64,000 bases of DNA from Obrimoposthia wandeli (taxonomy: Eukaryota): the NCBI GenBank assembly GCA_977020255.1, contig CDROCS010004515.1:124001-188000 (forward strand). Direction: 5' to 3'. The notes beneath the pieces were generated by a model. It did no database searches and had not been told where the DNA came from. It saw only the letters and a list, made by a program, of their open reading frames with translations. Position numbers and translations under genes: made by a program. Below, one piece after another: positions 30,301 through 53,610 of the stretch (the first letter of the stretch is position 1; each line of letters begins with the position of its first letter).

Positions 30301-33300
30301 ACTTCAAGTGACGGTTTCTGTATGTTTCGTGGGTAGAAAATTAGGGTGAGCAAGAATATGTATTTGTTTTTGCGATGAATATTCTGTGTGACGAGTTATT
30401 AGCGATATAAAGTCGTTTTTTAAAACAAAGACAAAGCATTTAAATAGCCATATTTTTCTGAATCCTCTAATATGCCCCCAATACTTTCGCAAGTAGCGTC
30501 AGAAATACCGTATCAATTAGAGGACAACGAATATGTAAGTTACTTTGCTCAACTCTCGATATTCGCGGAGTCATAAAGGAAATGGATATTGCCTTATATT
30601 ATAGAAACGGTGCTCAATTTAGCTATCTTTTCTAATATGCATCTGTTGTAATGCAGAAAATTATCCAAAATTCCATCACATCAAGACAAGCAAGAATATG
30701 TACACGACTTTTGTGGATTCCCAATATTCGCCGAGATATTTGCGAAAGGGTTACATGTCAGTGCATGTACCCGGATTTCTAAAAACGTAAATGCTCTTAG
30801 AGAAATTCTGAAAATAGAATACAAAATTAAGTTTCGCCGAGAAACTTCTGAATCTGTGTTTACTTTCTAAATTGGTTTAGTATTTGTCGAGTTATTCGCA
30901 ATCGAAAATCTCGATTCTAGGAATTAAGATATATGCTTAAAACTGTACTTTGCTCAAATAAAATATATTTTATATCTTTCTGGGGTTAAAAATTCAGAAA
31001 AAAATTATGGTGTGCTTAGATTTCTTTAATTCGCAATATTGAGAAAGAAATTCGTGAAAGAAACATTAAATGCAATATTATTAAAGTAGAAAATTCAATT
31101 TTACAATATAATTCCATATTGCACCAAAATGATCGGAAGCACCATCAAAAGACGCGTTTCAGTGAGCTGAGTACGGATATAATTTTAGATTCAAGAATGG
31201 TGCTGTTCTCCTTGAGAAATTTGAGTAAAAGTGAATTTTCTCTGAAACTCACCAAAATAGGGATCTAACATTTTTTTGCCCCAATTTCAACGACAGGGTA
31301 TGAAAACTTCCGTCTTGCTTAGAGGAGAAAGAATATGTGTGTGGTTTTGCTAATGGTAGCATATCTCCAGAGAAAGGTGTAAAAGCGTAAAATACCTGAA
31401 AAATTTATTAAAATAAAATTCACAATTCTTAAAATCTTAGCATTTTTCAGATGTAGAATTGTTCCCTGATTCCGAATATGTATGTCTAAAAATTCTACAA
31501 TGTCTGTGTGGGGAGATATTTGCAAACAAAATTCTGGATTTTTAAAAATTCAGAAAAATTGCTAAAAATATATTTTGCACCAATTTTAAAATCTTAGCAT
31601 GTTACAGACGTAGAATCGTTCACTGATTCCGAATATGTATGTCTAAATTCGCCAAAGTGTTTGTGTGGAAAGATAAAAGCGAAAGAATGTTCTAAAAGAT
31701 ATGAGTTAAAACACAGACAAAGTATTTTAATAAAATTATTTTATTTACAAACTTCTTCAATTCGGCTCTACATTTATCGCAAATAGCACCAGAAATTCGG
31801 TCTCATCAACACGAGAATGAATATGTATTCTATTGAAATATTAATAAAGTATTTGCTGAGATATAAATTATTTAAGATAAATGCAAAATTAATAATTCAA
31901 TTCAATTTTGCTAACTTTGTCAATTTGGCTCTAAAAACTTCGAAAGTAGCACCAAAAGAAACGTTGCAGAAAGATAGGAAAGAATCTATGCTTAGATTCT
32001 ATAGTTATTAAGTATTTCCAGAGAAATATGTGAAAACGACATATTCAGATAATACTGCATGTTAGGATGCCCACTGTACTCACTTTACAACTTTGGTTAG
32101 ACAAATTTTCAAGTTCCCGTATTCGCTTTGATGCGAAGTTAAGCTCATGTTAAAGCTAACAGTTTACAGATTACGAATCTATGTTTTACAAACCACAAAA
32201 TGTCTACACCTCACTTCACACATAAAAAGGGGAAAATTTGTTAGAAAAACCTGATATACATGCCTAATAAAATATGAAGATAGTTTTCGTTTCACATTTC
32301 TTTATCACCATCATGTAGCCAGTTACAGACATAGTCGTAAACCAAGTTTAACAGAATTTACAAAACTGAAAGTAATGTCTCAAAATCCCTTTGAAAGATA
32401 ATCTGCACAGGTACCACATACTGTAAATTACACGCCTATTTTTTCACAGGGGCACTAAATAATATTTTCTTTCACTGAAACTCTAGGTTTATATACAACA
32501 TAGCATGGGGAATCCATTTCTGAAAAGTATCTTTACCACACTGATCATCTTCTTTGATTTTTAGGGTTAGGTTGTGCCTTTTTGTGTCATGTGTGCAGTG
32601 TAGGCCAAAAACACCTGAAAAATATATCAAATTTTGTTGTCGTTATAACGAGCTTGTAGCCCGTGTCTGAAATAGTCTAGAACTAAGTTTGCTACAATTT
32701 ACAAATTTGAAAGCAATGTCTCAAAATCCCTTTGAAAGATAATCTGCACAGGTATCACATACTGTAAATTACACGCCTATTTTTTCACAGGGGCACTAAA
32801 TAAAATTTTCTTTCACTGAATTTCTAGAGTAGTACACAACTTGTGACGGGGAATCCATTTCTGAAAACCGTTTTTATAACACTTATCATCTTCTGTGTTT
32901 TTTAGGATTAGGTGGTCTCTGTTTGTGACGTGTGCAGTGTAGGCCCAAAAACACCTGAAAAATATACCAAACTTTGTTTTTGGTACAATGAGCGTGTAGC
33001 CCGTGACTGATATAGTCTAGAACTAAGTACGACAAAATTTAGAAATCCGAAAGCAATGTCTCAAAATCCTATTAAAAATATATGTGCACATGTACCAGTT
33101 AGTGCAATTTACACGCCTATATTTTCACCGGGGCACTAAATAATATTTTCTTTTACTGAAATTCTAGAGTAGTACACAACTTGTGACGGGGAATCTATTT
33201 CTGAAAACCATTTTTACCACACTTATCATCTTCTGGGTTTTTTAGGGTTAGGTGGTCCCTTTTTGTGACATGTGTGCAGTGTAGGCCTAAAGACACCTGA

Positions 33301-33650
33301 AACAGATTTCAAATTAGGTTTTCGTTATGATGAGCGTGTAGCCCGTGTCTGAAATAGTCTCGAAACAAGTTCTACACATTTTAGAAGTTCGAAAGCAGTG
33401 TCTTAGAATCCGTTTGAAAGATAATGTGCACCAGGACCACATACTGCAAATTACACGCCTATTTTTTCACCGGGGCACTTATAATTATTTTCTTTAACTG
33501 AAACTCTGGATTATAACACAACTTGTGACGGGGAATATATTTCTGAAAACCGTTTTCACCGCAGTGATCATCTTCTTTGTTTTCTAGGGTTAGGTTGTTT
33601 CTTTTTGTGACCTGTGTGCAGTGTAGGCCTAAAGACACTTGAAACAGTTT
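27372..33650. repeat. Composite repeat unit 2, truncated within its satellite
   Basis: Direct copy of unit 1 (about 90% identical by eye, with indels); abuts the Polinton capsid module. Confidence 0.9.
32365..33650. repeat. 342-bp satellite, ~4 monomers
   Basis: Anchors at 32425, 32766, 33106 and 33448. Confidence 0.95.
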
Positions 33651-33739
33651 TTTTGACGTTGCTAATTTAATTAAAAAGGGTAAATCAAGTAAAAGCCAAG
33701 AAGGTATTGGATTTAAGCGTAAAAAGAAGCAAAAAACGA

Positions 33740-34141
33740 GTTTCATTTGATGATAAACTCGCTAAAAACCTTGGTTTAAACAGAAATACCTTTGAAACCC
33801 ATACAATAAAAACCATAAAAGCTAAAAATAAGGCAAAACTTTTAAATGCTGTTAATCATTTATATATTTATACTAATTTAATAGAACCAACGCTTGTAGG
33901 AGGACAGCGAGTTCCACTTTTGAGAACAATATGGATATCTAAAAATGAAACTAGAGATGGGGACACTGTCGGTATGTGTATAGATCAACCAATGTATCTT
34001 CCAGTTTCTCTCTTTTCTATAAACAATATTGAAGTAAATATTAGAGATGATTCCGGACAACTAATAGATTTCACGTACGGGGCCAAGACAAGTTTAACAA
34101 TACATTTAAGAAAACAAAATGGCGAATCCAGCAATAATTGA
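33740..34141 (+). pseudogene. Polinton/adintovirus minor capsid protein (penton), C-terminal half
   Basis: LAKNLG...LYIYTNLIEPTLVGGQRVPLLRTI...PMYLPV...IEVNIRDDSGQLIDF...LTIHLRK is the typical penton C-terminal pattern. Confidence 0.8.
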
Positions 34142-34496
34142 AGCTTATAGTCAAAGCCAACAAGGTGGAGAATTACCATATTTTGTTGGTAAACAATACG
34201 GATCTGGCTGGCTTAGAACATTAGGTAGATTTGCCTTTCCTCTTTTAAAGAGACTCGGGCGATTTATATCAAAATTAGGAAAGGATTACCTTTCATCAAA
34301 GGACAACAAACTAATATTAACTTTTAAGAAGCATGCGCTTGATGAACTTGATAATGTTTTACCTGAAATTGCTAATTTGATTAGAAAACGTAAATCAAAT
34401 AAAAGCCTAGGAGGTAGCGGATTTAAAAGTAAAAAGAAGCTAAAAATTAATATAAACAAACGTAAGAATGTTGAAGGAACAATATTTGCAAAATGA
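34119..34496 (+). CDS. Polinton/adintovirus small basic virion core-like protein
   Basis: YSQSQQGGELPYFVGKQYGSGWLRTLGRFAFPLL motif, Gly-Gly and GxG sites, basic tail; lies between penton and MCP. Confidence 0.7.
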   Translation: MANPAIIEAYSQSQQGGELPYFVGKQYGSGWLRTLGRFAFPLLKRLGRFISKLGKDYLSSKDNKLILTFKKHALDELDNVLPEIANLIRKRKSNKSLGGSGFKSKKKLKININKRKNVEGTIFAK

Positions 34497-34580
34497 GTTG
34501 CGCCAAAACTGAATTGTGTATTTTTGATAAACCTCTACCGCATGTAGTTGTAGATAATGCTTTCTTTGAATTTCATATTT
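34493..34580 (+). pseudogene. 5' end of Polinton major capsid protein, truncated
   Basis: ATGA overlap with the upstream ORF; MSCAKTELCIFDKPLPHVVVDNAFFE resembles the KSELDLF..PPTQ N-terminus. Confidence 0.6.
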
Positions 34581-35597
34581 CTAGTTAACTCAGTATGATT
34601 CCATTTTTTCAACCTGAAGATTACATTATCAATACTCATATTTCGAATTTACCAGAAGAATATTTTTTATATACTTTTCATTAATTCCATTTCATCTGAA
34701 TTAATTTTATAAAATAATACCCTTTATGGTGTGGCAAGTCACCCTTAAACATTTTGTGCGCACACATGGAGGTCAAGTGATCTAGACTCCATTCTTCTAC
34801 CTACTATTTAATATACATGTCAAAGAAAATGTAATTTAAAAATGTGGCCTTAATTCTCTATATTACAATATATTACAATAATTTATAAAATTAATTTAGA
34901 TGAAATGAAATTAATGAAAAGTATATAAAAAATATTATTAAAAAAATATAATTCAACTTTAAAAATAATCAAATAATTTAAACAACTCAGTATAAAATTT
35001 ATTTATAAAATTCTGTTACAGACTATAAATATAACATTTACAATTTGCATTATTTAATTTTATTGTATTTTGGAAAAACAATAAACTGCATTATTTTATT
35101 TATTCTTTAATATATAATATTTTTTTACTAATTTGTTTAAAAAAATACTTAGATTAAATTAAAAATACTTCAAAGTATATAAGAATTTTTATTAAAATTA
35201 TTTATAAATATTAATTAAGAATAATTAGATAATTAAAATTGATATATTTAATTTTCGTGTTTGTAAAAAAATAGATTTCTTTTGAACTCGTATTGGAAGC
35301 CTTGTGATATTTATGTGTATTCTGGTGTATGAAAAATGCATTTAATTCAGAACTTTGAAGCTACATATTGATGAACTAGATTTGACAATTATAAAAAATG
35401 TAACTTTTAGAAAAACTTTTTTAAAAATATTTTTATTAAGTTAAGATTTTGATTAAAAAACTGTTTGGAAAACGTTTTTATTTTAATCGATCAAACTATT
35501 AAATGGTTTTAAAATGACTTCGAGCGAATTTTTTACACTTACTATATTTCTATTCTAAAATCCCATTATAATTTTATTTGAAATATATCTTATGCAG

Positions 35598-41198: not shown

Positions 41199-43019
41199 GT
41201 TGACATTGTCTTATTTATTCCAGCTATGTTTTTGTGCGTCTTATCTTTCTAATTTCTATTGGGTTTCTTTCTAATTTTCTTTGTAATTAATATATAAATG
41301 TACGTGTTTCTTTAAATGTATTACAAAAATTTATTAAATAATGCATTAAAATAATGAAAATTTGATAAAAATATTTTGCTATTTATACGCAACATGAAAA
41401 ATACTTTTGTATAATGAACAAATTAGTTAAATTTTTACAATGTAAAAGCACATTTTCAAAAAATATACATTGACATATTTTTATCAGTTTTGATTACATA
41501 AACTCCCATAACCTCATGGGCACTGATAAATGTACACTGTTCCTTCTACCAATCACCTGATCACACATCATATTATATTGATTTTAACAATTTGATCATC
41601 ACCACTTATAAGATATCACATCGGGAGATACATATATTTATAAACTTTATCTTTCACAAGAACTTTAAAATTTTAAACTAACAATTTCAAAAGTAATTAT
41701 ATTTTTAAATAAATATACAGAATACAAAAAATCGTTTTCGGAATTCCAGATAAAGATAGTGTACGTATTATTAAATTTTAGCAAAATACAATTTTTCATG
41801 TGAAAATGCCGCTTGTACTCAGGACTTACAGGAAATTTTGAGGTGGCTGTTGGTTCTGTAAAGTGCTATCAATATGTTCTCTTGCATTTGCAAGCATAAG
41901 AAAATAGTGTTGTGAATATGTCAACATCTTCATATGATGCTTGAAGTCCCGGAACTTTTCATAACATTATTCTGCAAGCCTTTTCGCAAAGCTAATAACT
42001 TATTGTTCATTGTTATTTTCAGCTCTTCAATGAACTAAATTTTCATTTTAAATTTCTATAAATGGATTTTGAATCATTTGATATCATATAATTAAGTTAT
42101 TATTTTGTTTCTGTCCCGTAATTTCAATTACACATATGATGTGTACGTTGTGCAGTTACATTCATGGCAAAAACCTATTCATAAATCTAATTTTAGTTTC
42201 TCTGTTTTATGTAAAATTGTGAAATCTTTTCAACACTTTGTGGCATGCTAACCAATGTACTTCAGTGTCAAAGGTAACGCAATAAAATTTTCTATCCACA
42301 TCTAACAAATTATTATATCGGCGACAGTTCTGTGACCTTGTATACATTTAGTTTACAGTTTTACTGACAAGGTTGAGGACAAGAAAAGTTGATAAACGAT
42401 ACTGTGAAAATATTGAATATATTTTTTATACTTAATTAATCAAGTTCGCTTCAATATTGTGTTTACTTATCATTCTTGCGCATCATCACTAAATTAAAAA
42501 ATAAGTTTATTCAGTTTGAGATATTATAATTTCAGCACTTGTGTTGGGGTTTCTATACGAAACTTGGTACAGATCCTCTTAATGCGGAGGGCCCCAACGT
42601 GAGTTCGATTAGAAGCAGGTCTTAAAGTTGGTCGTGGCCTACTTAGTGTTATGGTTGCCTAATCTCTTGTACTATCTGAAGGTATTTGATCTGATGTCTC
42701 TTATTCTGAAGGGTGTAAAAACAACTTGTTCTAATGTAGGAAATTGTTTATTTGTAATTCACGTAACTAACACAACAATACGTTTATGTACGTATTTCTA
42801 AAAAGTATGATAAAATTCCTAGGACTTCTGTAAGTCTCTACAAGAAGTGGGGATGAACCACGTATCGATTTTACGTTCAGGTGATTAAGCTTTTAGGTTT
42901 ATTCTTCTTACTTAGGTTGGTTAATCTATAACGCAACTCTCGTAAATTTCTTCGCTCCTACTTCTTATCTCTAGATAAAGTTTCTTGATTCCTTAACTCT
43001 ATCTGTTGTGTGTTTGACC

Positions 43020-43420
43020 CCGAATTGTCCACTGTGAACAATGGGTCTCCTAAAAACCTAATTGTCAAAGATGACAATGAAAACTTACTCCTAATTGTCA
43101 ACTACGGACAATGAACGAACCGAATTGTCAGCTAGGGACAATGAGTCTTACCGAATTGTCAACTAGGGACAATGAGTATTTGTCCGAATTGTCAACTAGG
43201 GACAATGAATGAACCGAATTGTCTGGTAGAATTCCTAATTGTCGCTGGGGACAATGAATAAGATAGATGATCTTAATTGCCAACTAGGGACAATGATTGA
43301 GTTAAAGAGTCAGCTATCCTAATTGCCAGCTAGGGACAATGAATTTGTTTACTAGGTCAAAATTTAGAATTACCAACAAGGGGTAATGAAGGTATCCTAA
43401 TTGCCAACTAGGGGCAATGA
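43020..43420. repeat. Array of 12 palindromic repeats (CC[G/T]AATTGTC-N6/7-GACAATGA) with variable 5-21 nt linkers
   Basis: Units at about 43020, 43057, 43090, 43120, 43151, 43184, 43214 (truncated), 43234, 43272, 43318, 43364 and 43396. Confidence 0.9.
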
Positions 43421-43551
43421 ATGCTCTAGTCGGTTGGCTTACCAATTACTGCGACTAGTGTGCTGTCCGATGTAGGTGGTTTTGACGAACTTGTGGGATC
43501 GTCTTCTTTCCAGAAATAAATTGTAAGTTCTTTTCAAATCGTCTTAAATTG

Positions 43552-44075
43552 ATATTCTTTTCAAATCGGATATTCTTTTCAAATCGGATACTCTTTTCAA
43601 ATCGGCTATTCTTTTCAAATCGGATACTCTTTTCAAATCGGATACTCTTTTCAAATCGGATACTCTTTTCAAATCGGATACTCTTTTCAAATCGGATACT
43701 CTTTTCAAATCGGCTATTCTTTTCAAATCGGATACTTTTTCAAATCGGATACTCTTTTCAAATCGGATACTCTTTTCAAATCGGATACTCTTTTCAAATC
43801 GGATACTTTTTCAAATCGGATACTCTTTTCAAATCGGATACTCTTTTCAAATCGGATACTTTTTCAAATCGGATACTCTTTTCAAATCGGATACTCTTTT
43901 CAAATCGGATACTCTTTTCAAATCGGATACTCTTTTCAAATCGGATACTCTTTTCAAATCGGATACTTTTTCAAATCGGATACTATACTCTTTTCAAATC
44001 GGATACTCTTTTCAAATCGGATACTCTTTTCAATCGGATACTCTTTTCAAATCGGATACTCTTTTCAATCGGATA
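43552..44075. repeat. 18-bp tandem array TTTTCAAATCGGATACTC, ~29 copies
   Basis: Direct read; occasional 1-2 nt deletions and a GGCTATTC variant. Confidence 0.97.
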
Positions 44076-44203
44076 TTCAGAAATCAATTGTTCTAAATAA
44101 TTTTAACTCTATTAATTCTTGAACACTACTTACCGATTTGTGGTCCAGTCGACTCTGGAGTTGATTCCGTATTTGTGATTTCTCGCAATGGGGATCTGCC
44201 TTA

Positions 44204-44291
44204 TATAGAGGCAAAGGAGAGCAACTCTGTCAATCACGACAGCTGATATATGAGGCAAAGGAGAGCAACTCTGTCAATCACGACAGCTGAT
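44204..44291. repeat. 44-bp tandem duplication, enhancer-like
   Basis: GAGGCAAAGGAGAGCAACTCTGTCAATCACGACAGCTGAT at 44208 and 44252. Confidence 0.9.
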
Positions 44292-45065
44292 TTATAATGT
44301 TGGGAATTTCTTCTGCTAAGTCTGTCAATCAATTGGCAGCTGAAAAGCAGTTAAGTCTACTCGTTATATAAAAGACTTACTTTGACTTGTCAATCAACTT
44401 CTCTGAATTTAGGGTTTGATCGACTTTCTTAATTAGTCGTTTTTCTTCTTTTTTCTTTTAATTAACTTTAAATCTTGTCCTTTTTGGGTTAATTAATTTA
44501 ACTTTTATACATTTCACATTATACACGACCTTCGTGGTCCTCCTAATTTTTACCCTAAATTCCACTAATTTCACTTCTAAAACTAAAATTAATATTTAAT
44601 TTAATTTTCAACCTTGCTTTCAAGGATTTTTATTTTAGTATTTAATCGACTAAAATATTTAAATTTCTTAATTCTCAAACCTAACACTTGCATTACCTTA
44701 AACTTATCTTGACTCTGTTATATCATGCAAGTTCAAGTAACTTCATAAATTCAAAAACTTACATTGCAAGCTCTGATAAACATATCAAGTTAAATTATAC
44801 CTCTGACGCTTACCAGACGGAAGAGATTTAAGCTGCCATAACAATCATTATAGCTGTACGACATTGAAATCAACTTCAATTTGGACAGAAAATCAAACGT
44901 AATTTTGTCATTTATAATATTTTTCTCTTACCTGCTATTTATTCTTTGTATGTTTTTTTTAACCTATTATATATTGAAACCTGTGATCATAGTGCACCTA
45001 TATGCCTATGCATATAGAGTAACAGTTTTAGAAAATATGTATTGTACTTAAATCTAACAGTAATT

Positions 45066-48000
45066 TGATCCAAATGCAGCGGACATCAAATAAAAATTCA
45101 TAAACTCCAATTTTATTGATTTCTTTATTTTTAATTCAAAACTTTAAATCACTTCATCAATAACCTCATTTCTACAGCAGCCAATAAAAACAATCCCTCA
45201 ACAACAACATTATTCTTAATCTCACTTTCACACATCACCGCAATCCACACAACTCCAAAATTTATTAATACAATTGTTACAATCGACATATGCTAACCGG
45301 GCCACTTGACGTCATCGCTTATGACGTCACAACATTCCCTCCCCTTGACCAAACCCGATCCCTAGGTTTGTCAACACCTCTGTTCACTCGCTTCCACCTC
45401 CAACGGACACATCTTTACTACCGGTCTCACACACTCTTTCACTCCTACATTTACTACACAGCTACTGACTTCTGCTTCCTTATTCGCTCTTAATTCCTTT
45501 ATTCTCCCGACAGGCCATACTCCCTGCTCATTCTTCTGGTTTAGTACCCACACAAAATGTCCCTTCCTCAACGGTATTTCTTTTCGTTTCCATTTACTTC
45601 TCCTAATCCAGGTGGGTATCATCTCACTCATCCATCTTTTCCACACATGACTAACGATCTCTTGTATTCTAAACCACCGATGCCTGATCTTCCGTCCCCG
45701 TTAATGCTGTTTCATTCCCCAAACTTTCTTCTTTCCACTCACCATGAAATCTTTTGGTCTTAATGGTAATTCTTCCTTGCTATCTGCTGACTGAAAAGTG
45801 ATTGGTCGAGAGTTCAACAGTTCCTCAACTTCAACGAATACCGCCATCAGCTCTTCATCACTTAGATCAGCATTTATTAACACCATCACAATCGCTTTCT
45901 TAGCACTCTTGATCAAACTTTCAAAAACTTCCCCAAAGTGTGGCGCGGCTGGTGGGTCAAATATCCAACGAATCTCTTCTTGTTCCTACTGCTTTCTTAT
46001 CCTGTATTCGTCAATTACAATTTCACTTGTTACGTTAACTGTCCCTTGAAAGTCTGTGCCGTTATCGGAAATAATCAATTGCGGTCTGCCTCGTCTTCCC
46101 ATAAATCTCTTTAACGCCCTTATAAATACGTCCGACTCTAAATTCCAAGCCACCTCTAGATGCATCGCCCGTGTTTGTTAGCATGTAAACAAACATAAAT
46201 ATCGTTTATTTCGAACACGTTCTCTCTCCTGTTTTGTAAAATAAGGTCCTGCAAAATCCACGCCCACTTTATCAAATGCTCGAAGTGGCGGTAAAAATCT
46301 AAATCTAGGCAATGGTGCCATCTTTACTATCGTCCTTTGCGCACTCCGTCGTTTACATTCCAAACATTTCATCTGATAATCTCGTATTACCACTCTAGCC
46401 TTTTCAATCCACGTCTCCCGATTTATTTCACTCAGTATATGGCTTACTTCGGCTGCATGTTTCTTGGACTGATGTATCTTTCTGATAATCAACCACGTCA
46501 CCCAACTGTCTCTTGCTAAAATTATCTGATACCGTGTCTGTTCCGGAAGTATTTCTGTGTGAATTATACGGTTATTACTTCTCATTAACCCATCCTAATC
46601 TAATATCGGATTTAACCCTTCTATTCTACTTCCTTGACGTATTTGCTTTCCTTTAGTTAAGGCTTTAATTTCATCGGAATAATATTGCTGCTGATCTCGC
46701 TTTATTAACGCTAATCGTGCATCTTCTAACTCATCTACAGATAATATATCTTTCTCACGTTGGTCTATTCTGAATTTACAATTATCTACGAAACGCTGTA
46801 CTCATGCTCGTACTCAAACTAAACGTTTCCAATCTGAGAAGGTCTCTATTTGAAATACATCCGTATGTCCAACATAAGTTTTAGTTGTTGATACTTGACC
46901 AAAAAAACTGGCTGTACGTTTTATCTTCCTAATTGAATGTTTTATTTTTATTCCTTCATTTGGCCACCCCTCTTTGTCTCTCTTCAAAAATTCAGGTCCC
47001 TCCCACCAATACTTTGATTCAATCAGGCCTTTTATATCCATTCCTCTCGATAACAAATCAGCGGGATTCTGTTTGGTAGGCACGTAATGCCATTGACTAG
47101 ATCTTGTACTTCGTTGAATATTAGCTACTCTATTTGCTACAAATGTTTTAAATACAAATTTATCTCACTTATCTCGATATCTAGGACCTTGGACATCTTC
47201 TTTCTCAAATCCAAACCGACACATGCTGCCATCAACTCTAATCTAGGTAAACAAACTGTAGATATTGGAACCACTCTTGCTTTTGCCATTACAAGTGTGC
47301 TACGTACCTTCCCTTCTCCTCGTTCACACGCATACATCACCGCTGCATAGGCCTTCATTGGAGCATCCACAAAAACATGATAATCCATCACAGTCGTTTC
47401 TTTGTCTTTTAAGCATCGCACCATTCGAACTTTATCCAATAAATGACACTCATTACTCCAACTGGTAATTGATGCTATCAACTTATCTTCTAATTCTTCA
47501 TCCCTGCCCACTGCATTCAACCATATATCTAGCATGATCATTTCCCCTCGAATTGTGAATGCACTGATCATCCATAACGGATCATAAATTCTTGCTATCA
47601 GGCTAAGAAAGTTTTTTTGTTGTAACTCGATCCAACTTTATTTCTTTAACATCAAATTTAAAAACATCCTCCTGTGCATCCCATTTTACTCCTAAGGTTT
47701 TTGTTTCCACCTTTTTAGTTTTTTCTATCTTAGATTCAGTCGCCCTTTCATCACTTGGTACTGTTTCCATAAAATCTTGACTATTACTCAGCCATTTTCT
47801 AGCTCTCATTTCATCTGCTGCCTATAATTTTTGTAGTTCCCACCTTAGTTTTATCTCCTGATAAACTGTAGTTACATAATCAATGCTATCATCCGTATAT
47901 GTTGAACATAGAATAGTTTCCGCGGCTTTCGGATACTTCTCTTGATGTTTTCTTGAGTAATTAATTGTATGGCGATGCATTTAATCCAAACACCAGTATA

Positions 48001-50449
48001 TTAAACTCAAATTCACGTAACTCACCGTCTTTCCACCACAAAAACCGCAGATCTCTTTTATCCTTCTCGTATACTTTTATTTGGAAATACATTTTTTTCA
48101 AAATCGTGTCAAGATAGTCACTAGATCTCCCTGTAGCTTTGGTCCTCCTTCAATCGCATCATTCAGACTCAATTCTCGCACTTTGGAAGCGGCATCAAAA
48201 ACAATTCGGACCTTTGTTGTGGTCTTATCACGACGTATAACTGGAAAATGTGGCAATAACCACTTAGTCTCATTTTCCTTTGATTTCGAAATCATCATCA
48301 CATATCTCTTGTCTATATGATCATCTATAACTCGGCTATATTCCATCTTTAATTGAGAGTCACGTGCAAATTTCCGATTCAAACTCTCCAATGACATTTT
48401 ACCATTTCTTTACTTTTGCATAACTCTTCTTTCAGCAGTTTCCACGGTATCCATACCTGATACTTGTCACCGTCATACGCAATCGTGTGTTTCGTTTTTT
48501 GGGTCATTCTTTCATCTTCGATTGACATTATCGTTTCATTCATACATTCCTCAATAACCCAAAATCTTTGCAGCGTCTTGTTTAATTGTTCGTCTAATGC
48601 CAGATACGTTCTTGCGAAATTCGTTGTATTTCCTCCACTACCATACACGTCCAACCCAAGCGGTGTCAACCGAACCACTGGATCTCCATCTCTTCCAGTA
48701 ACTTCTCTAATCACTCAATGCGCTCTCATGCAATCTGCACCTATCAATAAATCAACTTTTCGCCATCTCCGCCCTCTTTGCGGGAATTGTATATTCCGGA
48801 GAAGCAGCAATCTTCCTGCGACTTTATCGTATACTATCAAATCACCAGTTACGTTATTTACGGTTAGAGCATCTAATATTAAACTTACTTTATTGTCCAC
48901 ACTTTTAACCTTTACTTTGATTGATGTAGCTCTTATCTCTTGCACCTTCCCTTCAACAACTCCCACTGGAACCATATATTCTGGTCACTCTAGTCTCAAT
49001 GCCTTCGCTATCAAGTTGTTGACATAACTCGTCGTGCTGGCATCATCTAATAGTGCGTTTACCGACACTGTCTTTCCTCGATTTTCCAGAATGACAAACA
49101 CTGTTCGCAATGTTATCATTTGATCTGGCTTCTTTCTAATCTTACGCGTTACATATGTCTCCTGCATCTTTGCATTATCTTTCGAATCTCTGTGGACTAA
49201 ATAATGGTGTTTTGTTCTGCAAACCGTTACATTGCAAAGCTTCTTCATCTTACATTCGTTTGTGCGATGTCCTCCGTTTAGACAATTGAAAAATAATAAA
49301 TGTTGAAATAAATATATATGTTGAATAAAATAATAACTGACACCTCTCATTCAACGCTAAGCTCATACATTTCTCACATTGACTTAGATAATGTTTCATC
49401 CCACACTGAAGACAATTAATTCTTCGCGCTTGGGTTCCTCGCTATTTGTTAGTAAGATACGTAACTCTTCCTCTTTCTACTCCAGTCCTTCCGACTCCTC
49501 GTGATACAACAGCTGCCTTCTGCAAATAACCGGTCTCCTATCGAACCCATTTTGCTAACGTTTCCATATCTTCTTCCTCCTTACACGTATGAATGTGCCT
49601 TCCCCAACTGATTATAGATACCTCCGGCATTAATTTCATCACTTTATGGAAAAACATTCCATTTTTTATTTCTCCTTCCTTCTTCATCTCTTTCAATTTG
49701 ACTATTGTCGTTTCCACCAACTCTGAATATTTTTCCCAATCTCGCACTTCACCATGCCGTACTAATCTAATTTTTTCAATTTCTTCTAACATTATATTAT
49801 ATTTCTTGTCTTCTGCCCCGAATCACCGTTCCAATTTCAGAAATGCGCTTTCATAAGCTTCTCCGGAGAACCCCAAATTCTCAATAATTTTAAAAGCTTC
49901 ACCTCTTAAACTATCTCGGATATGTAGTAGTTTCTCTTCTTTTTCTCTCCTAGCATTTCCAATATATACGTCAAATACTGCTCTCCATTGTTCGTATTCT
50001 CGTACGTTCTGACTAAATGTAGGTACGGCCAATTTCTTCAACCTCTTTAGACATCTGGTATCGTCTGTCCTTTTTCCTTCTTCTTCACTATCAAATTCTC
50101 TTTCGGAACTTGTTATTGATGGTACCTTTAACAACAGGATACTCATATCTTAGTATTTCCTTTCTATATCCACAAAATCTCTTTTCAATTCCGCCACCTT
50201 TTCTCCTTTTTTGTTCTCCACACACCAATCAACCATTTTCGAAATTTCTTCTATAACCTCCATATACGCGTCTTCATATCGTTCTCTTCTTTCTTTTACC
50301 TCTGTGGCATCTAGGTCTTTCAACACTTTGTTTCTTGATTTAGTCAACTGACCCTTGATTATTCGCTTTCTTGTCATCTTCTCCCTTAACTCCTCACCAT
50401 CTAACCCTCCCCGCATTCGTAACTGGATATGGATCACAGTTCCTTGCAT
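45066..50449 (-). mobile_element. Decayed Bel/Pao LTR retrotransposon (gag-PR-RT-RH-IN), 3' LTR only
   Basis: DUF1759-like gag, CCHC knuckles, LLDDAS protease, LPHFPV..DKTTTKVRIVFDAA, TYTDD RT motif, VFVDA..AYAAV RNase H, GVDFAGP integrase, WPVGRI tail; PPT GGGGAGGGAA followed by TGTTG at 45334. Many stops and frameshifts; the left LTR boundary is tentative. Confidence 0.95.
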
Positions 50450-51899: not shown

Positions 51900-53610
51900 A
51901 AGGCTTTTATTCTTAATAACCCATCTTCTTTTATGGTCAAAACATTTTAAAGCAACTTTAGAGGTAAATGTTGTATGAAGCTGATGGTTAACCGATGCTA
52001 TACGTGACTAGTTAACACTTATAATTTCTTAATTTTCATAACAATTGAGGTAGTCTTGGTGTCTTAAGTTAGTTTGTTTTAAAGAAATACCCTTAGCCTT
52101 TAATTTATTTTGAAGTGATTAACATTTTGATTTTAAGAAAACCCATTCATTATAATCAGTACCCTCACTTTTATCTTTAAATTTTCTATTTACAGCTTTA
52201 AAGTTTTCCCAATACAAGGGATGTGTTTTAAGATAATTACTCGTATCTAAATACCCATCCTTAATCATTTCTTTGAGTAATTAATCCTTATTAATATTCA
52301 CACATTCAAGGAAAAAAGAATCTGTGTCCATATCTACAATTCTAATACTACAATTAAAAGTTTGTCTATACCGTTCAAACTCAACATATTATAATTGATA
52401 CATTCGTAATTTAGATAGATCAAGTACAGCTTGACCGATATATGAAGGCCGATCTAAATATATTTCCTTTTTCTGCTTAAAAACTAAATTTAAATCATCA
52501 TTTATTTGAGTATGACGTTTAAACCCAGGACTCTAAACTAATATTTCAAACCGTTTATCATTATTACATAATTTTATTTTAAGATTCTCAACCGTTTTAC
52601 CGTAAACGGAATTATTTTTTAATTTGTAAAACTCATATTCAAACTTATTAACACTAGTTGATCGCTTTTTTGAATTAAATTCTATATATTGTTTTAAAAC
52701 AGATTTTTGTCTAAACTGAATAGCCCTATGAATTTTTAAGATTTCAGCACCAAGAAAAACATAGAATTGTAGTAAACGGAAATGTATTACATAATGTTCT
52801 TTATCATTATGTGTTAAAATTAATTTAGGAGTTTTTGAGTTTGGTGGACACATCTTATGTGGTCCAATAGGTAAGTCATCAACATTTTCTCATGTATACG
52901 ATCCGGAATATGTAAATCTACTTCAACAAGAAAACCCCATACGGTTTTACTTAAATCCTTTTTACTTCCAACTAAATTCAAAATATAATCAAAATTATCA
53001 TGCACCAATTTAAATTCCATATGTGGTAAAGGTTGACTTAAAGCCCTTCTGTATACGTTATTCACACCTATATAGAGAAGTGATGTATTATCATTGGACT
53101 TACAATAATGTTTATTAACAAAATTCATACCTCCTCTAATACCTGCTTCAAATAGATTAAACATTTCTGGATCATGTAGCAATTCTACTTTATGTTTTAA
53201 TGATTTTACTGCCCTACACCAGCTAAGACTGGGAATACTAAAGAAATATGGAGCCTCAAGATTATCATCAGATCTAACTTTCAGTCTTAAAGCCTCAAAT
53301 ACATCATAAAGTAAGACGCATATATTCCATCATATAGTCTTTAATATTAGTGAAAGCTAGTTTTGTCAACATTGTATGAGCTAAATTATATTTATCATCT
53401 GTAACACTATCAGGAAATTCACATTTTGGAAGTATGTATATGTTTAACAGTCACATCAGGTTCTAAAATACTTTCAAAATCAGCGTAAACTACAAAAGGA
53501 CGTTGAACTAACTTTGACCAATCTGTGAATTCACAATATTTATTATCCGACATAGTGAATAAGATTGTAGTATCAGTATTAAAAATTCTAAAAATCTGTA
53601 TGATCATACT
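51900..53610 (-). pseudogene. Polinton/adintovirus protein-primed DNA polymerase B, decayed
   Basis: PFVVYADFES, GIRGG, SQPLP, EVDL, KIHRAIQF, YKLKNNSVYGKTVEN and DTDS motifs in order, with stops and frameshifts. Confidence 0.9.

What the first reader, a model, noticed from the sequence alone, without database searches (positions are those of the whole stretch)
43020..43420. CRISPR-like palindromic repeat array with compensatory stem substitutions
Seen: 12 repeats with stem ATTGTC/GACAAT, a 6-7 nt loop usually containing CTAG, and non-repeating 5-21 nt linkers. Two distal units change both arms together (ATTACC/GGTAAT near 43364; ATTGCC/GGCAAT at 43396), while two others change one arm only. 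Ordinary minisatellite slippage would not be expected to give variable linkers with covarying arms. Inference: selected dyad sites, such as inverted ACAAT (HMG/Sox-like) sites, integrase or recombinase sites, or an RNA multi-hairpin used for packaging or processing.
Basis: partly seen in the sequence, partly recalled or inferred. Interest (0 to 1): 0.75.

Follow-up and report, generated by a model that had tools for sequence, protein, structure and literature searches.

The report
Hairpin array in giant retroelement LTR
The "CRISPR-like" repeats are eleven small stem-loops inside the terminal repeat of a giant virus-like retrotransposon present in thousands of copies, and the way their arms changed shows they are kept as RNA hairpins, probably docking sites for a protein.

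Summary
Window 43020-43420 has 11 complete units (ATTGTC-type arm, 6-7 nt loop, complementary arm) plus one pseudo-unit.

It is not CRISPR. The array lies in a 2,145-bp solo LTR (42542-44686, minus strand, TGTT...AACA ends, 4-bp target duplication CTTG). The LTR belongs to a ~24-kb Ty3/gypsy-type element in a 1.35-Gb eukaryotic genome. Its build matches the published "Burro" giant elements of planarians: Gag, an in-frame viral fusion glycoprotein, protease, BIR/RING, RT, RNase H and integrase, plus accessory ORFs.

The unit motif occurs 34,379 times genome-wide; the reversed control occurs 0 times. In 51 aligned arrays, 99.2% of stem cells pair. Linkers carry shared substitutions in 45% of columns, arms in about 10%.

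All seven shared non-Watson-Crick states are G.U on the element's coding strand; none is A x C. Genome-wide, wobble forms number 6,369, often in pairs ~21 kb apart, as the two LTRs of one element would lie. Mismatch forms number 68, all scattered single hits. One unit shows the full series UA, UG, CG and GC, GU, AU in place.

This strand asymmetry points to selected sense-strand RNA hairpins, not double-stranded DNA sites. The function is inferred: a multivalent protein-binding signal. No RNA data were available.

The scan already noted the same kind of array on another copy (s1-314211).

The parts
42542..44686 (-). Solo LTR (2,145 bp) of a giant Ty3/gypsy-type (Burro-like) LTR retroelement. 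In the element's sense it runs from 44686 down to 42542 and ends TGTTAGG...CCCCAACA.
   Evidence: Boundaries come from blastn against 20 genomic copies. The depth of the public DNA contigs rises sharply at about 42540. Orientation comes from the PBS and the coding strand of full copies.
42538..42541 (.). Target-site duplication CTTG (left copy).
   Evidence: CTTG flanks both LTR ends. Four other solo LTRs also have 4-bp duplications: ATAG, CCAT, TTAT, ATTT.
44687..44690 (.). Target-site duplication CTTG (right copy).
43020..43420 (-). Array of 11 stem-loop units plus one pseudo-unit. In the element's sense each unit reads UC-[AUUGYC]-C.N.U.A.G.Y.U-[GRCAAU]-U.M.G.G.
43400..43418 (-). Unit 1 (sense order): arms AUUGCC/GGCAAU, loop CCUAGUU, all Watson-Crick.
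   Evidence: same arms in 50 of 51 arrays; dG -5.7 kcal/mol
43369..43387 (-). Unit 2: arms AUUACC/GGUAAU, loop CCUUGUU, all Watson-Crick; two pairs changed on both sides relative to the common unit.
   Evidence: (invariant in 51 arrays)
43322..43340 (-). Unit 3: arms AUUGUC/GGCAAU (U.G wobble on the sense strand), loop CCUAGCU. In other copies the same unit is GUC/GAC, GCC/GGC, GCC/GGU or ACC/GGU.
   Evidence: pair 96-108: GC 44, GU 5, AU 2; pair 97-107: CG 39, UG 10, UA 2
43276..43294 (-). Unit 4: arms AUUGUC/GGCAAU (U.G wobble), loop CCUAGUU. Other copies have GUC/GAC, GCC/GGC or GCC/GGU.
43238..43255 (-). Unit 5: AUUGUC/GACAAU with the 6-nt loop CCCAGC.
43217..43233 (-). It is not a hairpin.
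   Evidence: the other copies have an ordinary linker here
43188..43206 (-). Unit 6: AUUGUC/GACAAU, loop CCUAGUU.
43155..43173 (-). Unit 7: AUUGUC/GACAAU, loop CCUAGUU. In other subfamilies this unit is GCC/GGC or GCC/GGU.
   Evidence: pair 275-285: UA 43, CG 8; pair 274-286: GC 47, GU 4
43124..43142 (-). Unit 8: AUUGUC/GACAAU, loop CCUAGCU.
43094..43112 (-). Unit 9: AUUGUC/GACAAU, loop CGUAGUU.
43061..43078 (-). Unit 10: AUUGUC/GACAAU with the 6-nt loop AUCUUU; predicted to fold as a 7-bp stem with a 4-nt loop.
   Evidence: dG -6.5 kcal/mol
43024..43042 (-). Unit 11 (last): AUUGUU/GACAAU (U.G wobble at the loop-closing pair), loop CACAGUG; an atypical unit with an alternative fold.
   Evidence: (UG 42, CG 9)
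43551..44075 (-). 18-bp tandem array (about 29 copies) in the same LTR, upstream of the hairpins in the element's sense. Its length and unit sequence differ between copies and subfamilies.
44200..44207 (-). TATATAAG motif, a candidate core promoter (inferred only). It lies in a 44-bp duplicated module.
   Evidence: present at LTR position 374-480 in 20 of 26 LTRs
44128..44134 (-). GGTAAGT, a splice-donor-like motif 73 nt after the TATA motif (inferred only).
   Evidence: an exact match follows the TATA motif by 72-101 nt in 10 of 26 LTRs
42747..42752 (-). AATAAA about 210 nt before the LTR's 3' end, found in all 26 LTRs examined; a candidate polyadenylation signal downstream of the array.

Best explanation
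The array is a tandem set of 11 short RNA stem-loops (9-15 in other copies). Each has a 6-bp stem and a 6-7-nt loop with the pattern C-N-U-A-G-Y-U, plus conserved single-stranded flanks. It lies in the LTR of a Burro-like giant Ty3/gypsy retroelement. Shown here: the window copy is a solo LTR on the minus strand. The units are far better conserved than the linkers across subfamilies of the element. Base pairing is maintained specifically on the element's coding (sense) strand, through G.U intermediates followed by compensating changes. Inferred: the array sits upstream of the only AATAAA that is conserved near the LTR's 3' end, so it should be carried in the 3' part of every element transcript. 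If the upstream TATATAAG is the promoter, it would also be in the 5' leader. I propose that it works as a multivalent docking platform. Many copies of one small hairpin, with a sequence-specific loop and flanks, would bind many copies of one RNA-binding protein. The most likely partner is the element's own Gag, whose nucleocapsid part has a CCHC knuckle and repeated Arg-rich modules, to mark and pack the ~24-kb genomic RNA. Next most likely is an export or stability factor, as with retroviral CTE, RRE or RexRE elements. My odds: selected sense-strand RNA hairpins about 0.75; packaging about 0.3 and export or stability about 0.25 of the total. The confidence of 0.65 is for the statement as a whole: a selected sense-strand RNA hairpin array that acts as a cis-acting protein-binding signal.
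For: Context: the unit 42542-44686 recurs at 90-96% identity (3,085 first-look candidates). It has TG..CA-type ends and 4-bp target duplications.

Orientation: 7 of 20 copies are followed in the element's sense by TATTAAAG and then TGGTGCCCCGAGTGAGG, a tRNA-type primer-binding site. The internal region encodes, on that same strand, Gag with a CCHC knuckle, a Monjiviricetes-type fusion glycoprotein, protease, BIR, RING, RT, RNase H and integrase. This matches the Burro description in PMC6431247.

Reality of the motif: 34,379 genomic matches against 0 for the reversed control.

Selection on the units: in 51 arrays, shared substitutions occur in 45% of linker columns, 9-11% of arm columns and 13% of loop columns.

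Pairing: 99.2% of 3,413 stem cells form standard pairs. Four pairs changed on both sides. Sliding the partner by 1-3 columns gives 12-67% pairing and 0-1 such pairs.

Strand asymmetry: shared non-Watson-Crick states are 7 G.U and 0 A x C on the sense strand, while singletons are 4 and 3. Genome-wide, pair 5 is U.G in 1,891 units and C x A in 32; pair 4 is G.U in 4,478 units and A x C in 36. The mismatch forms are single scattered hits. Many wobble hits lie in same-strand pairs about 21 kb apart, the spacing of the two LTRs of one element.

Change in place: unit 3 keeps its own loop and linkers and shows all five states GUC/GAC, GUC/GGC, GCC/GGC, GCC/GGU and ACC/GGU. A double-stranded dyad site is symmetric, so both orders of change should occur. 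Only the order that passes through a sense-strand wobble is seen.

Folding and motif: single units fold as predicted, dG -3 to -6.5 kcal/mol. The loop and flank positions -1 C, L1 C, L5 G and +1 U are (near-)invariant in 467 units, as expected for a protein site.
Against: There is no RNA evidence. The only public runs holding the sequence are DNA-like contigs from one sample. Transcription, the transcription start and the poly(A) site are therefore all inferred from motifs.

The independent evolutionary events are few: about 7 wobble states and 4-6 completed double changes. The large genome-wide counts come from amplification of lineages, not from independent events.

When the whole array is folded, the minimum-energy structure prefers pairing between different units over the local hairpins. 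The antisense strand also folds better than shuffles (z -2.8 against -4.2 for sense).

The stems are short and weak.

Because the array is in the LTR, spliced RNAs would carry it at their 3' ends too. That is awkward for a packaging signal meant to pick out unspliced RNA.

The position, upstream of a possible promoter near the LTR's 3' end, is also the classic place for enhancer repeats.
Confidence: 0.65

Rival explanations
1. The units are double-stranded DNA sites: an array of dyad-symmetric binding sites for a dimeric transcription factor or architectural protein. The array would then act as an LTR enhancer or insulator, like the 12 Su(Hw) sites of Drosophila gypsy or the U3 enhancer repeats of retroviruses.
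For: The array has about a dozen sites in about 400 bp inside an LTR. It lies upstream of the LTR's 3' part, where a TATA-less promoter could sit. The half-sites are conserved in sequence as well as in pairing, between subfamilies and in the sister family on contig C1. The gypsy element offers a precedent with 12 sites (PMC2374998).
Against: A symmetric dyad predicts that ATTGCC/GACAAT and ATTGTC/GGCAAT are equivalent. Yet they occur 32 against 1,891 times, and the analogous forms of the next pair 36 against 4,478 times. All 7 shared one-sided states are wobbles on the coding strand. Changing both half-sites in the same way has no obvious benefit for a DNA-binding dimer. The 7-nt spacer is as conserved as the arms.
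Confidence: 0.15
2. The array is a neutral palindromic minisatellite. The arms stay complementary because imperfect palindromes are 'corrected' by intrastrand template switching during replication or reverse transcription, and the units stay alike through concerted evolution. No function is involved.
For: The array clearly arose by tandem duplication: a 30-31-bp period in part of the window copy and a regular 34-bp period in the C1 subfamily. Unit number varies between copies, from 9 to 15.
Against: Units keep individual identities across subfamilies (their own loops CCTAGCT, CCCAGC, CGTAGTT and their own linkers). Homogenisation is therefore weak. Template-switch correction has no reason to leave only sense-strand G.U intermediates. 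Wobble-bearing units persisted and amplified to thousands of copies without being corrected. Loops and single-stranded flanks are conserved too.
Confidence: 0.05
3. The hairpins act during reverse transcription rather than as a protein platform. For example, they could be structured repeats in a long R region that help the first strand transfer, or loop-loop (CUAG is self-complementary) contacts that link two genomic RNAs.
For: If TATATAAG at 44200-44207 is the promoter, the array lies in a ~1.4-kb R region. CUAG is in most loops. The copy-number changes in both repeat blocks of the LTR are what misaligned strand transfer would produce.
Against: The sister subfamily has mostly CCUCGUU loops, which are not self-complementary. 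The extent of R is unknown. Nothing here distinguishes this role from protein binding.
Confidence: 0.1

Closest known systems
Burro / GYPSM1 giant Ty3/gypsy-like LTR retroelements of dugesiid planarians (Grohme et al. 2018, as reviewed in PMC6431247)
   Same: The element is present in thousands of copies and is longer than 20 kb. It has one huge polyprotein with Gag and CCHC, a mononegavirus-type fusion glycoprotein in frame between gag and pol, BIR and RING motifs, the order PR-RT-RH-IN, accessory ORFs, and tandem repeats drawn in the LTR region.
   Different: The accessory ORF with two dual-specificity phosphatase domains is not in the review's list of motifs. The papers I could search mark tandem repeats but do not describe a hairpin array.
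Retroviral cis-acting RNA elements that bind several protein copies (HIV-1 RRE, HTLV RexRE in U3/R, MPMV CTE, Psi packaging stem-loops); from established knowledge, not tested here
   Same: These are structured RNA in the untranslated or LTR-derived part of the genomic RNA. They are maintained by compensatory change and are used to export, stabilise or package a long unspliced RNA.
   Different: Those elements are single complex folds or two to four different stem-loops. Here one 6-bp hairpin is repeated 9-15 times in tandem with unstructured linkers. No binding protein is known for it.
Repeat-A of Xist and engineered MS2/PP7 hairpin arrays (from established knowledge)
   Same: They share the architecture: about 8-24 copies of a short conserved hairpin-forming core, separated by variable linkers, giving high-avidity recruitment of one protein. 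As in Xist repeat-A, pairing between units competes with the local hairpins in energy models.
   Different: The sequence is unrelated and the carrier is different (a retroelement LTR rather than a host lncRNA or a reporter).
Gypsy insulator: 12 Su(Hw) sites in the 5' UTR of Drosophila gypsy (PMC2374998)
   Same: It is also a Ty3/gypsy-type element with about a dozen short repeated sites in about 350-400 bp of non-coding sequence, separated by variable linkers.
   Different: The Su(Hw) sites are asymmetric double-stranded DNA sites, not palindromes, and they lie outside the LTR. The strand-specific wobble pattern found here is not expected for them.
CRISPR arrays
   Same: The resemblance is only visual: short partly palindromic repeats separated by non-repeating stretches.
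   Different: The genome is eukaryotic and has no cas context. The repeats are 19-27 nt with 11-31-nt linkers. The whole block, linkers included, is copied thousands of times.

Membership tests
CRISPR array | Lies in a prokaryotic genome or mobile element, normally with cas genes and a leader. | tested here: not met
   The genome has 1.35 Gb in 6,912 contigs. The surroundings are retrotransposon remnants. There are no long ORFs near the array.
CRISPR array | Spacers are unique acquired sequences that differ between arrays. | tested here: not met
   The same linkers, with few substitutions, occur in all 51 aligned copies.
LTR of a Ty3/gypsy-type (Metaviridae) retroelement | Terminal TG...CA with short inverted ends, and a 4-6-bp target-site duplication. 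| tested here: met
   The ends are TGTTAGG...CCCCAACA. Five solo copies have the 4-bp duplications CTTG, ATAG, CCAT, TTAT and ATTT.
LTR of a Ty3/gypsy-type (Metaviridae) retroelement | A primer-binding site complementary to a tRNA 3' end lies just inside the 5' LTR. | tested here: inconclusive
   TGGTGCCCCGAGTGAGG lies 8 nt after the LTR in 7 of 20 copies and in L059. It has the ...CACCA-complement form. The matching tRNA gene was not found; there is none in the window.
LTR of a Ty3/gypsy-type (Metaviridae) retroelement | A polypurine tract lies just before the 3' LTR. | tested here: inconclusive
   The conserved junction ...TTTTTGGAACCCCCGAGGTA|TGTTAGG is not purine-rich.
LTR of a Ty3/gypsy-type (Metaviridae) retroelement | The internal region has the order gag, protease, RT, RNase H, integrase, between two direct LTRs. 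| tested here: met
   Pfam finds zf-CCHC, aspartyl protease, RVT_1, RT_RNaseH, Integrase_H2C2 and rve in that order on the sense strand. Array pairs lie about 21-22 kb apart on one strand, and the LTR ends were located in the full copy.
Burro-like giant retroelement | Internal region near or above 20 kb, with one giant polyprotein that carries env in frame between gag and pol, plus BIR. | tested here: met
   The internal region is 19.5 kb. An open frame of 3,809 codons runs Gag, Monjiviricetes_fusion, PR, BIR, RING, PR, RT, RH, IN. This was compared with the description in PMC6431247.
Burro-like giant retroelement | Sequence homology to published Burro/GYPSM1 elements, and a planarian host. 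| not testable with these tools
   No Repbase or planarian reference is on hand, and the organism is coded.
Selected cis-acting RNA stem-loop | Base pairs are kept across relatives, with compensatory and wobble changes exceeding controls. | tested here: met
   99.2% of cells are paired, 4 pairs changed on both sides, and the slid controls give 12-67% pairing. Only one shared stem change breaks a pair (the outermost pair of the last unit; that subfamily's loop can add inner pairs), while 45% of linker columns vary.
Selected cis-acting RNA stem-loop | The constraint is strand-specific: G.U is tolerated on the transcribed strand only. | tested here: met
   Shared states are 7 G.U against 0 A x C. 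Genome-wide the counts are 6,369 against 68.
Selected cis-acting RNA stem-loop | The element is present in a transcript and folded in the cell. | not testable with these tools
   No RNA run holds the sequence.
Transcription-factor dyad-site array (enhancer or insulator) | Recognition is of double-stranded DNA, so the two arms of a dyad are equivalent and one-sided variants should occur in both arms. | tested here: not met
   Among lineage-shared states, only the variants that are wobbles on the sense strand occur.
Any curated Rfam family | A match at the family's gathering score. | tested here: not met
   There are 0 matches in the whole window.

The most novel reading that the evidence does not exclude
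A giant retrovirus-like element has evolved a natural 'MS2-array-like' device. About a dozen copies of one mini-hairpin in its LTR are each read by a module of its own Gag (or of an accessory protein). This would give the avidity needed to select, condense or export a ~24-kb genomic RNA. That would be a packaging or export strategy not described for retroviruses or LTR retrotransposons, and a possible part of the explanation for how these elements passed the usual size limit.
Probability: 0.3. Interest if true: 0.7.

Novelty: new variant of a known kind. Interest (0 to 1): 0.5.

Why it matters
Burro-type elements are among the largest LTR retroelements known and make up a large share of the genomes that carry them. 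How such a long RNA is transcribed, exported and packaged is an open question (PMC6431247 lists these as the expected size limits). A conserved tandem hairpin array in the LTR, with a clear record of pair-preserving evolution across thousands of copies, gives a concrete cis-acting candidate to test. The record itself is useful too. Private mutations in dead copies serve as a neutral baseline. Lineage-shared changes serve as the selected set. Together they show that the constraint acts on one strand without any RNA data, and the approach could be reused for other high-copy elements.

Tried and rejected
CRISPR: rejected (eukaryotic genome, linkers identical between copies).

Rfam scan of the whole window: no family matched.

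Second LTR: I looked for one in the window to make the neighbouring BEL/Pao genes (45371-50449) the owner of this LTR. None was found, and there is no similarity between that region and a 20-kb stretch (LTR plus internal region) of a copy of the giant element. The target duplication shows an independent solo-LTR insertion.

Orientation: my first guess (element on the + strand) was wrong. It was corrected by the PBS and the coding strand.

Expression: the look-up of sequencing runs found no RNA run.

Whole-array folding: it does not return the local hairpins but inter-unit helices. The thermodynamic prediction alone is therefore not evidence for the array structure.

Loop partners: a search for sequences complementary to the loops elsewhere in the element found none. 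Loop-loop kissing through CUAG is not conserved in the sister subfamily.

Small-RNA precursor: rejected, because 6-bp stems are too short for Dicer- or Drosha-type processing (established knowledge).

ADAR- or APOBEC-type mutation bias as the cause of the asymmetry: considered and set aside. All four transition types occur on the sense strand. Only their order differs: the wobble-making change comes first and the partner change second.

Literature: paper searches found no description of this array.

tRNA: no tRNA gene is in the window to confirm the PBS.

Full report
**1. What is at the coordinates**

Window 43020-43420 holds 11 complete units. Each has a 6-nt arm, a 6-7-nt loop and a complementary 6-nt arm. 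Nine units have 7-nt loops (10 window matches to ATTRYY-N7-RRYAAT against 1.46 expected; 9 fall in the array). Two units have 6-nt loops.

**2. Context**

The genome is a 1.35-Gb eukaryote. The stretch recurs at 90-96% identity, with 3,085 first-look candidates.

Blast against 20 copies puts the repeat's edges at 42542 and 44686. The ends read TGTTGGGG...CCTAACA on the + strand, and both are flanked by CTTG. Four other copies also have 4-bp duplications. The window copy is therefore a solo LTR.

Recurrent flanks fix the orientation:
- Seven of 20 copies carry, next to the 42542-type end, the reverse complement of TATTAAAG-TGGTGCCCCGAGTGAGG, a tRNA-type primer-binding site.
- Five of 20 copies carry a constant internal sequence next to the 44686-type end.
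- The long ORFs of full copies lie on the same strand.

The element's sense strand is therefore the window's minus strand.

A contiguous full copy (L059-L061) has:
- a 19.5-kb internal region;
- an open frame of 3,809 codons encoding Gag (capsid-like part, Arg-rich repeats, one CCHC knuckle), a Monjiviricetes-type fusion glycoprotein, protease, BIR, RING, a second protease, RT, RNase H and integrase;
- an ORF with two dual-specificity phosphatase domains, and three smaller ORFs.

This is the architecture that PMC6431247 describes for the Burro giant gypsy-like elements of planarians, including env in frame between gag and pol. The host's name is withheld, so 'planarian' is an inference.

The BEL/Pao genes next door (45371-50449, minus strand) are a different, decayed element.

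**3. Layout of the LTR in the element's sense (26 LTRs)**

In order, the LTR contains:
- a conserved first ~240 nt;
- a variable part, usually with a TATATAAG motif, and in about 40% of LTRs an exact GGTAAGT 72-101 nt after it;
- a tandem array of 18-20-bp units whose sequence and number differ between subfamilies;
- the hairpin array;
- a conserved last ~480 nt, with an AATAAA about 210 nt from the end in every LTR.

The array is always upstream of that AATAAA. If this is the poly(A) signal, every transcript that ends in the 3' LTR carries the array. Whether the 5' leader carries it too depends on the transcription start, which I could not determine.

**4. Is the hairpin selected, and on which molecule?**

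(a) Frequency. The 21-nt unit motif, read on the sense strand, occurs 34,379 times in the genome. The reversed control occurs 0 times.

(b) Units against linkers. In 51 distinct arrays, shared substitutions (two or more copies) occur in 45% of linker columns. They occur in only 9-11% of arm columns and 13% of loop columns. The units keep their own loops and linkers across subfamilies, so homogenisation between units does not explain this.

(c) Pairing. For the structure of 12 local helices:
- 99.2% of 3,413 cells form standard pairs;
- four pairs changed on both sides;
- sliding the 3' partner by 1-3 columns gives 12-67% pairing and 0-1 such pairs.

(d) Strand asymmetry. Among non-Watson-Crick states shared by two or more copies, seven are G.U on the sense strand and none is A x C. 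Singletons are 4 and 3, as neutral decay would give.

The remaining shared 'other' states have two sources. One is a 1-nt alignment shift in unit 10. The other is the loss of the outermost pair of the last unit in one subfamily, whose loop can form two extra inner pairs.

(e) Genome-wide counts:

| Stem pair | Wobble on sense strand | Mismatch on sense strand |
|---|---|---|
| Pair 5 | U.G in 1,891 units | C x A in 32 units |
| Pair 4 | G.U in 4,478 units | A x C in 36 units |

The mismatch hits are single hits on 32 and 36 different contigs. Many wobble hits come in same-strand pairs about 21 kb apart, the spacing of the two LTRs of one element. The mismatch frequency (about 0.1%) equals the private per-site divergence seen in the alignment. 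I therefore read the mismatches as post-insertion decay and the wobbles as inherited through retrotransposition.

(f) Change in place. Unit 3 keeps its loop CCUAGCU and its linkers, and it shows all five states GUC/GAC, GUC/GGC, GCC/GGC, GCC/GGU and ACC/GGU in different subfamilies. Unit 4 shows four of these states, and unit 7 shows three. All four transition types occur on the sense strand, so a strand-biased mutation process is not the cause. What is constant is the order: the change that gives a sense-strand wobble comes first, and its partner follows. In unit 11, and in one private variant of unit 1, the changed base is in the 5' arm and again gives U.G. The rule is therefore 'wobble on the sense strand', not '3' arm first'.

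A dyad site on double-stranded DNA is symmetric, so both orders would be equivalent there.

I conclude that pairing is selected on a single-stranded sense molecule, most simply the element's RNA.

The caveat is that the independent events are few. Seven of seven gives p of about 0.008 under a symmetric null. Short conversion tracts between units cannot be fully excluded.

**5. Folding**

Single units fold as the expected hairpin, with dG from -3 to -6.5 kcal/mol at 37 C. Folding the whole array gives z = -4.2 for the sense strand and -2.8 for the antisense strand. However, the minimum-energy structure uses helices between units. Energy models alone do not establish the local hairpins. The comparative evidence does.

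**6. What it probably does**

In 467 units, the positions -1 C, loop C1, loop G5 and +1 U are (near-)invariant, and +3/+4 GG is strongly preferred. The conserved object is therefore a ~27-nt hairpin with specific single-stranded features, repeated 9-15 times. This is what a multivalent binding platform for one RNA-binding protein looks like.

The element's own Gag has a CCHC knuckle preceded by repeated Arg-rich modules, which makes it my first candidate partner (packaging). An export or stability factor is the second candidate. These assignments are inference only. Presence of the array at the 3' end of all transcripts argues somewhat against a role in telling genomic RNA from spliced RNA.

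**7. Rivals**

- Enhancer or insulator-type DNA site array (0.15). The position and the gypsy Su(Hw) precedent favour it. The strand asymmetry and the conserved spacer argue against it.
- Neutral palindromic minisatellite with hairpin-templated correction (0.05).
- A role in strand transfer or RNA dimerisation (0.1).

**8. Novelty**

The carrier element is of a known kind (Burro-like). Structured cis-acting RNAs in retroelement ends are also known. A tandem array of one mini-hairpin in an LTR, with this evolutionary record, is not described in the papers I could search.

The scan had already noted the same kind of array on another copy in this genome (s1-314211). That follow-up rested on one locus. 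The present work adds the multi-copy and genome-wide tests and the strand argument.

**9. Limits and rules**

- Because this is a provirus-like element of an animal, I only observed copies. The DNA alignment printed a majority line for the 500-column non-coding array alignment, which I did not use or reproduce.
- A mutational test on a working copy of the element is referred.

Noticed in passing
window 43551-44075: An 18-bp tandem array (about 29 copies; unit GATACTCTTTTCAAATCG on the + strand) lies in the same LTR. Its length varies strongly between copies. Other subfamilies have a different 19-20-bp unit at the same place, so this block turns over while the hairpin array next to it is conserved.
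   Followed up: partly
window 44128-44296: A 44-bp module is duplicated in the LTR. One copy carries TATATAAG and is followed 73 nt later by GGTAAGT. This looks like a promoter plus an early splice donor, as in retroviruses whose major donor lies in R. The motif pair recurs in many but not all LTR subfamilies.
   Followed up: partly
L060:5258-8107 (C11 copy); also L021:4216-9894 and L025:92-2084: The giant element carries an accessory ORF with two dual-specificity phosphatase (DSPc) domains downstream of integrase. In one copy it is part of an 1,892-aa open frame. DSPc is not among the Burro motifs listed in PMC6431247.
   Followed up: partly
L059:3519-5400: The Gag of the element has three or more near-identical Arg/Asn/Asp-rich repeats (SWNRNRDDSRGRNN-like) just before a single CCHC zinc knuckle. 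This is a repeated basic module that could match the repeated hairpins.
   Followed up: no
L059 versus L061 (C11:142000-167000): The 5' and 3' LTR arrays of this one full-length copy belong to different array subtypes, with several unit states and loops differing. That suggests recombination between elements rather than simple decay after insertion.
   Followed up: no
window 45371-50449 (minus strand): This stretch is a decayed BEL/Pao retrotransposon (Peptidase_A17, DUF5641, integrase zinc domain; many frame breaks). It is unrelated to the giant element, whose solo LTR lies about 685 bp downstream of its pol end.
   Followed up: partly
window 52533-53182 (minus strand): Two adjacent ORF fragments lie here; one has weak similarity to protein-primed family-B DNA polymerase (DNA_pol_B_2, E 2e-4, below the Pfam cut-off). 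This may be a Maverick/Polinton-type remnant.
   Followed up: no
L047, L048 (C1:10000-12600 and 32400-35000): A sister subfamily has 15 hairpin units at a regular 34-bp period. All have the arms AUUGUC/GACAAU, but their loops are mostly CCUCGUU or CCUUGUU. Loop positions 3-4 are therefore free, while C1, G5 and U7 are kept.
   Followed up: partly
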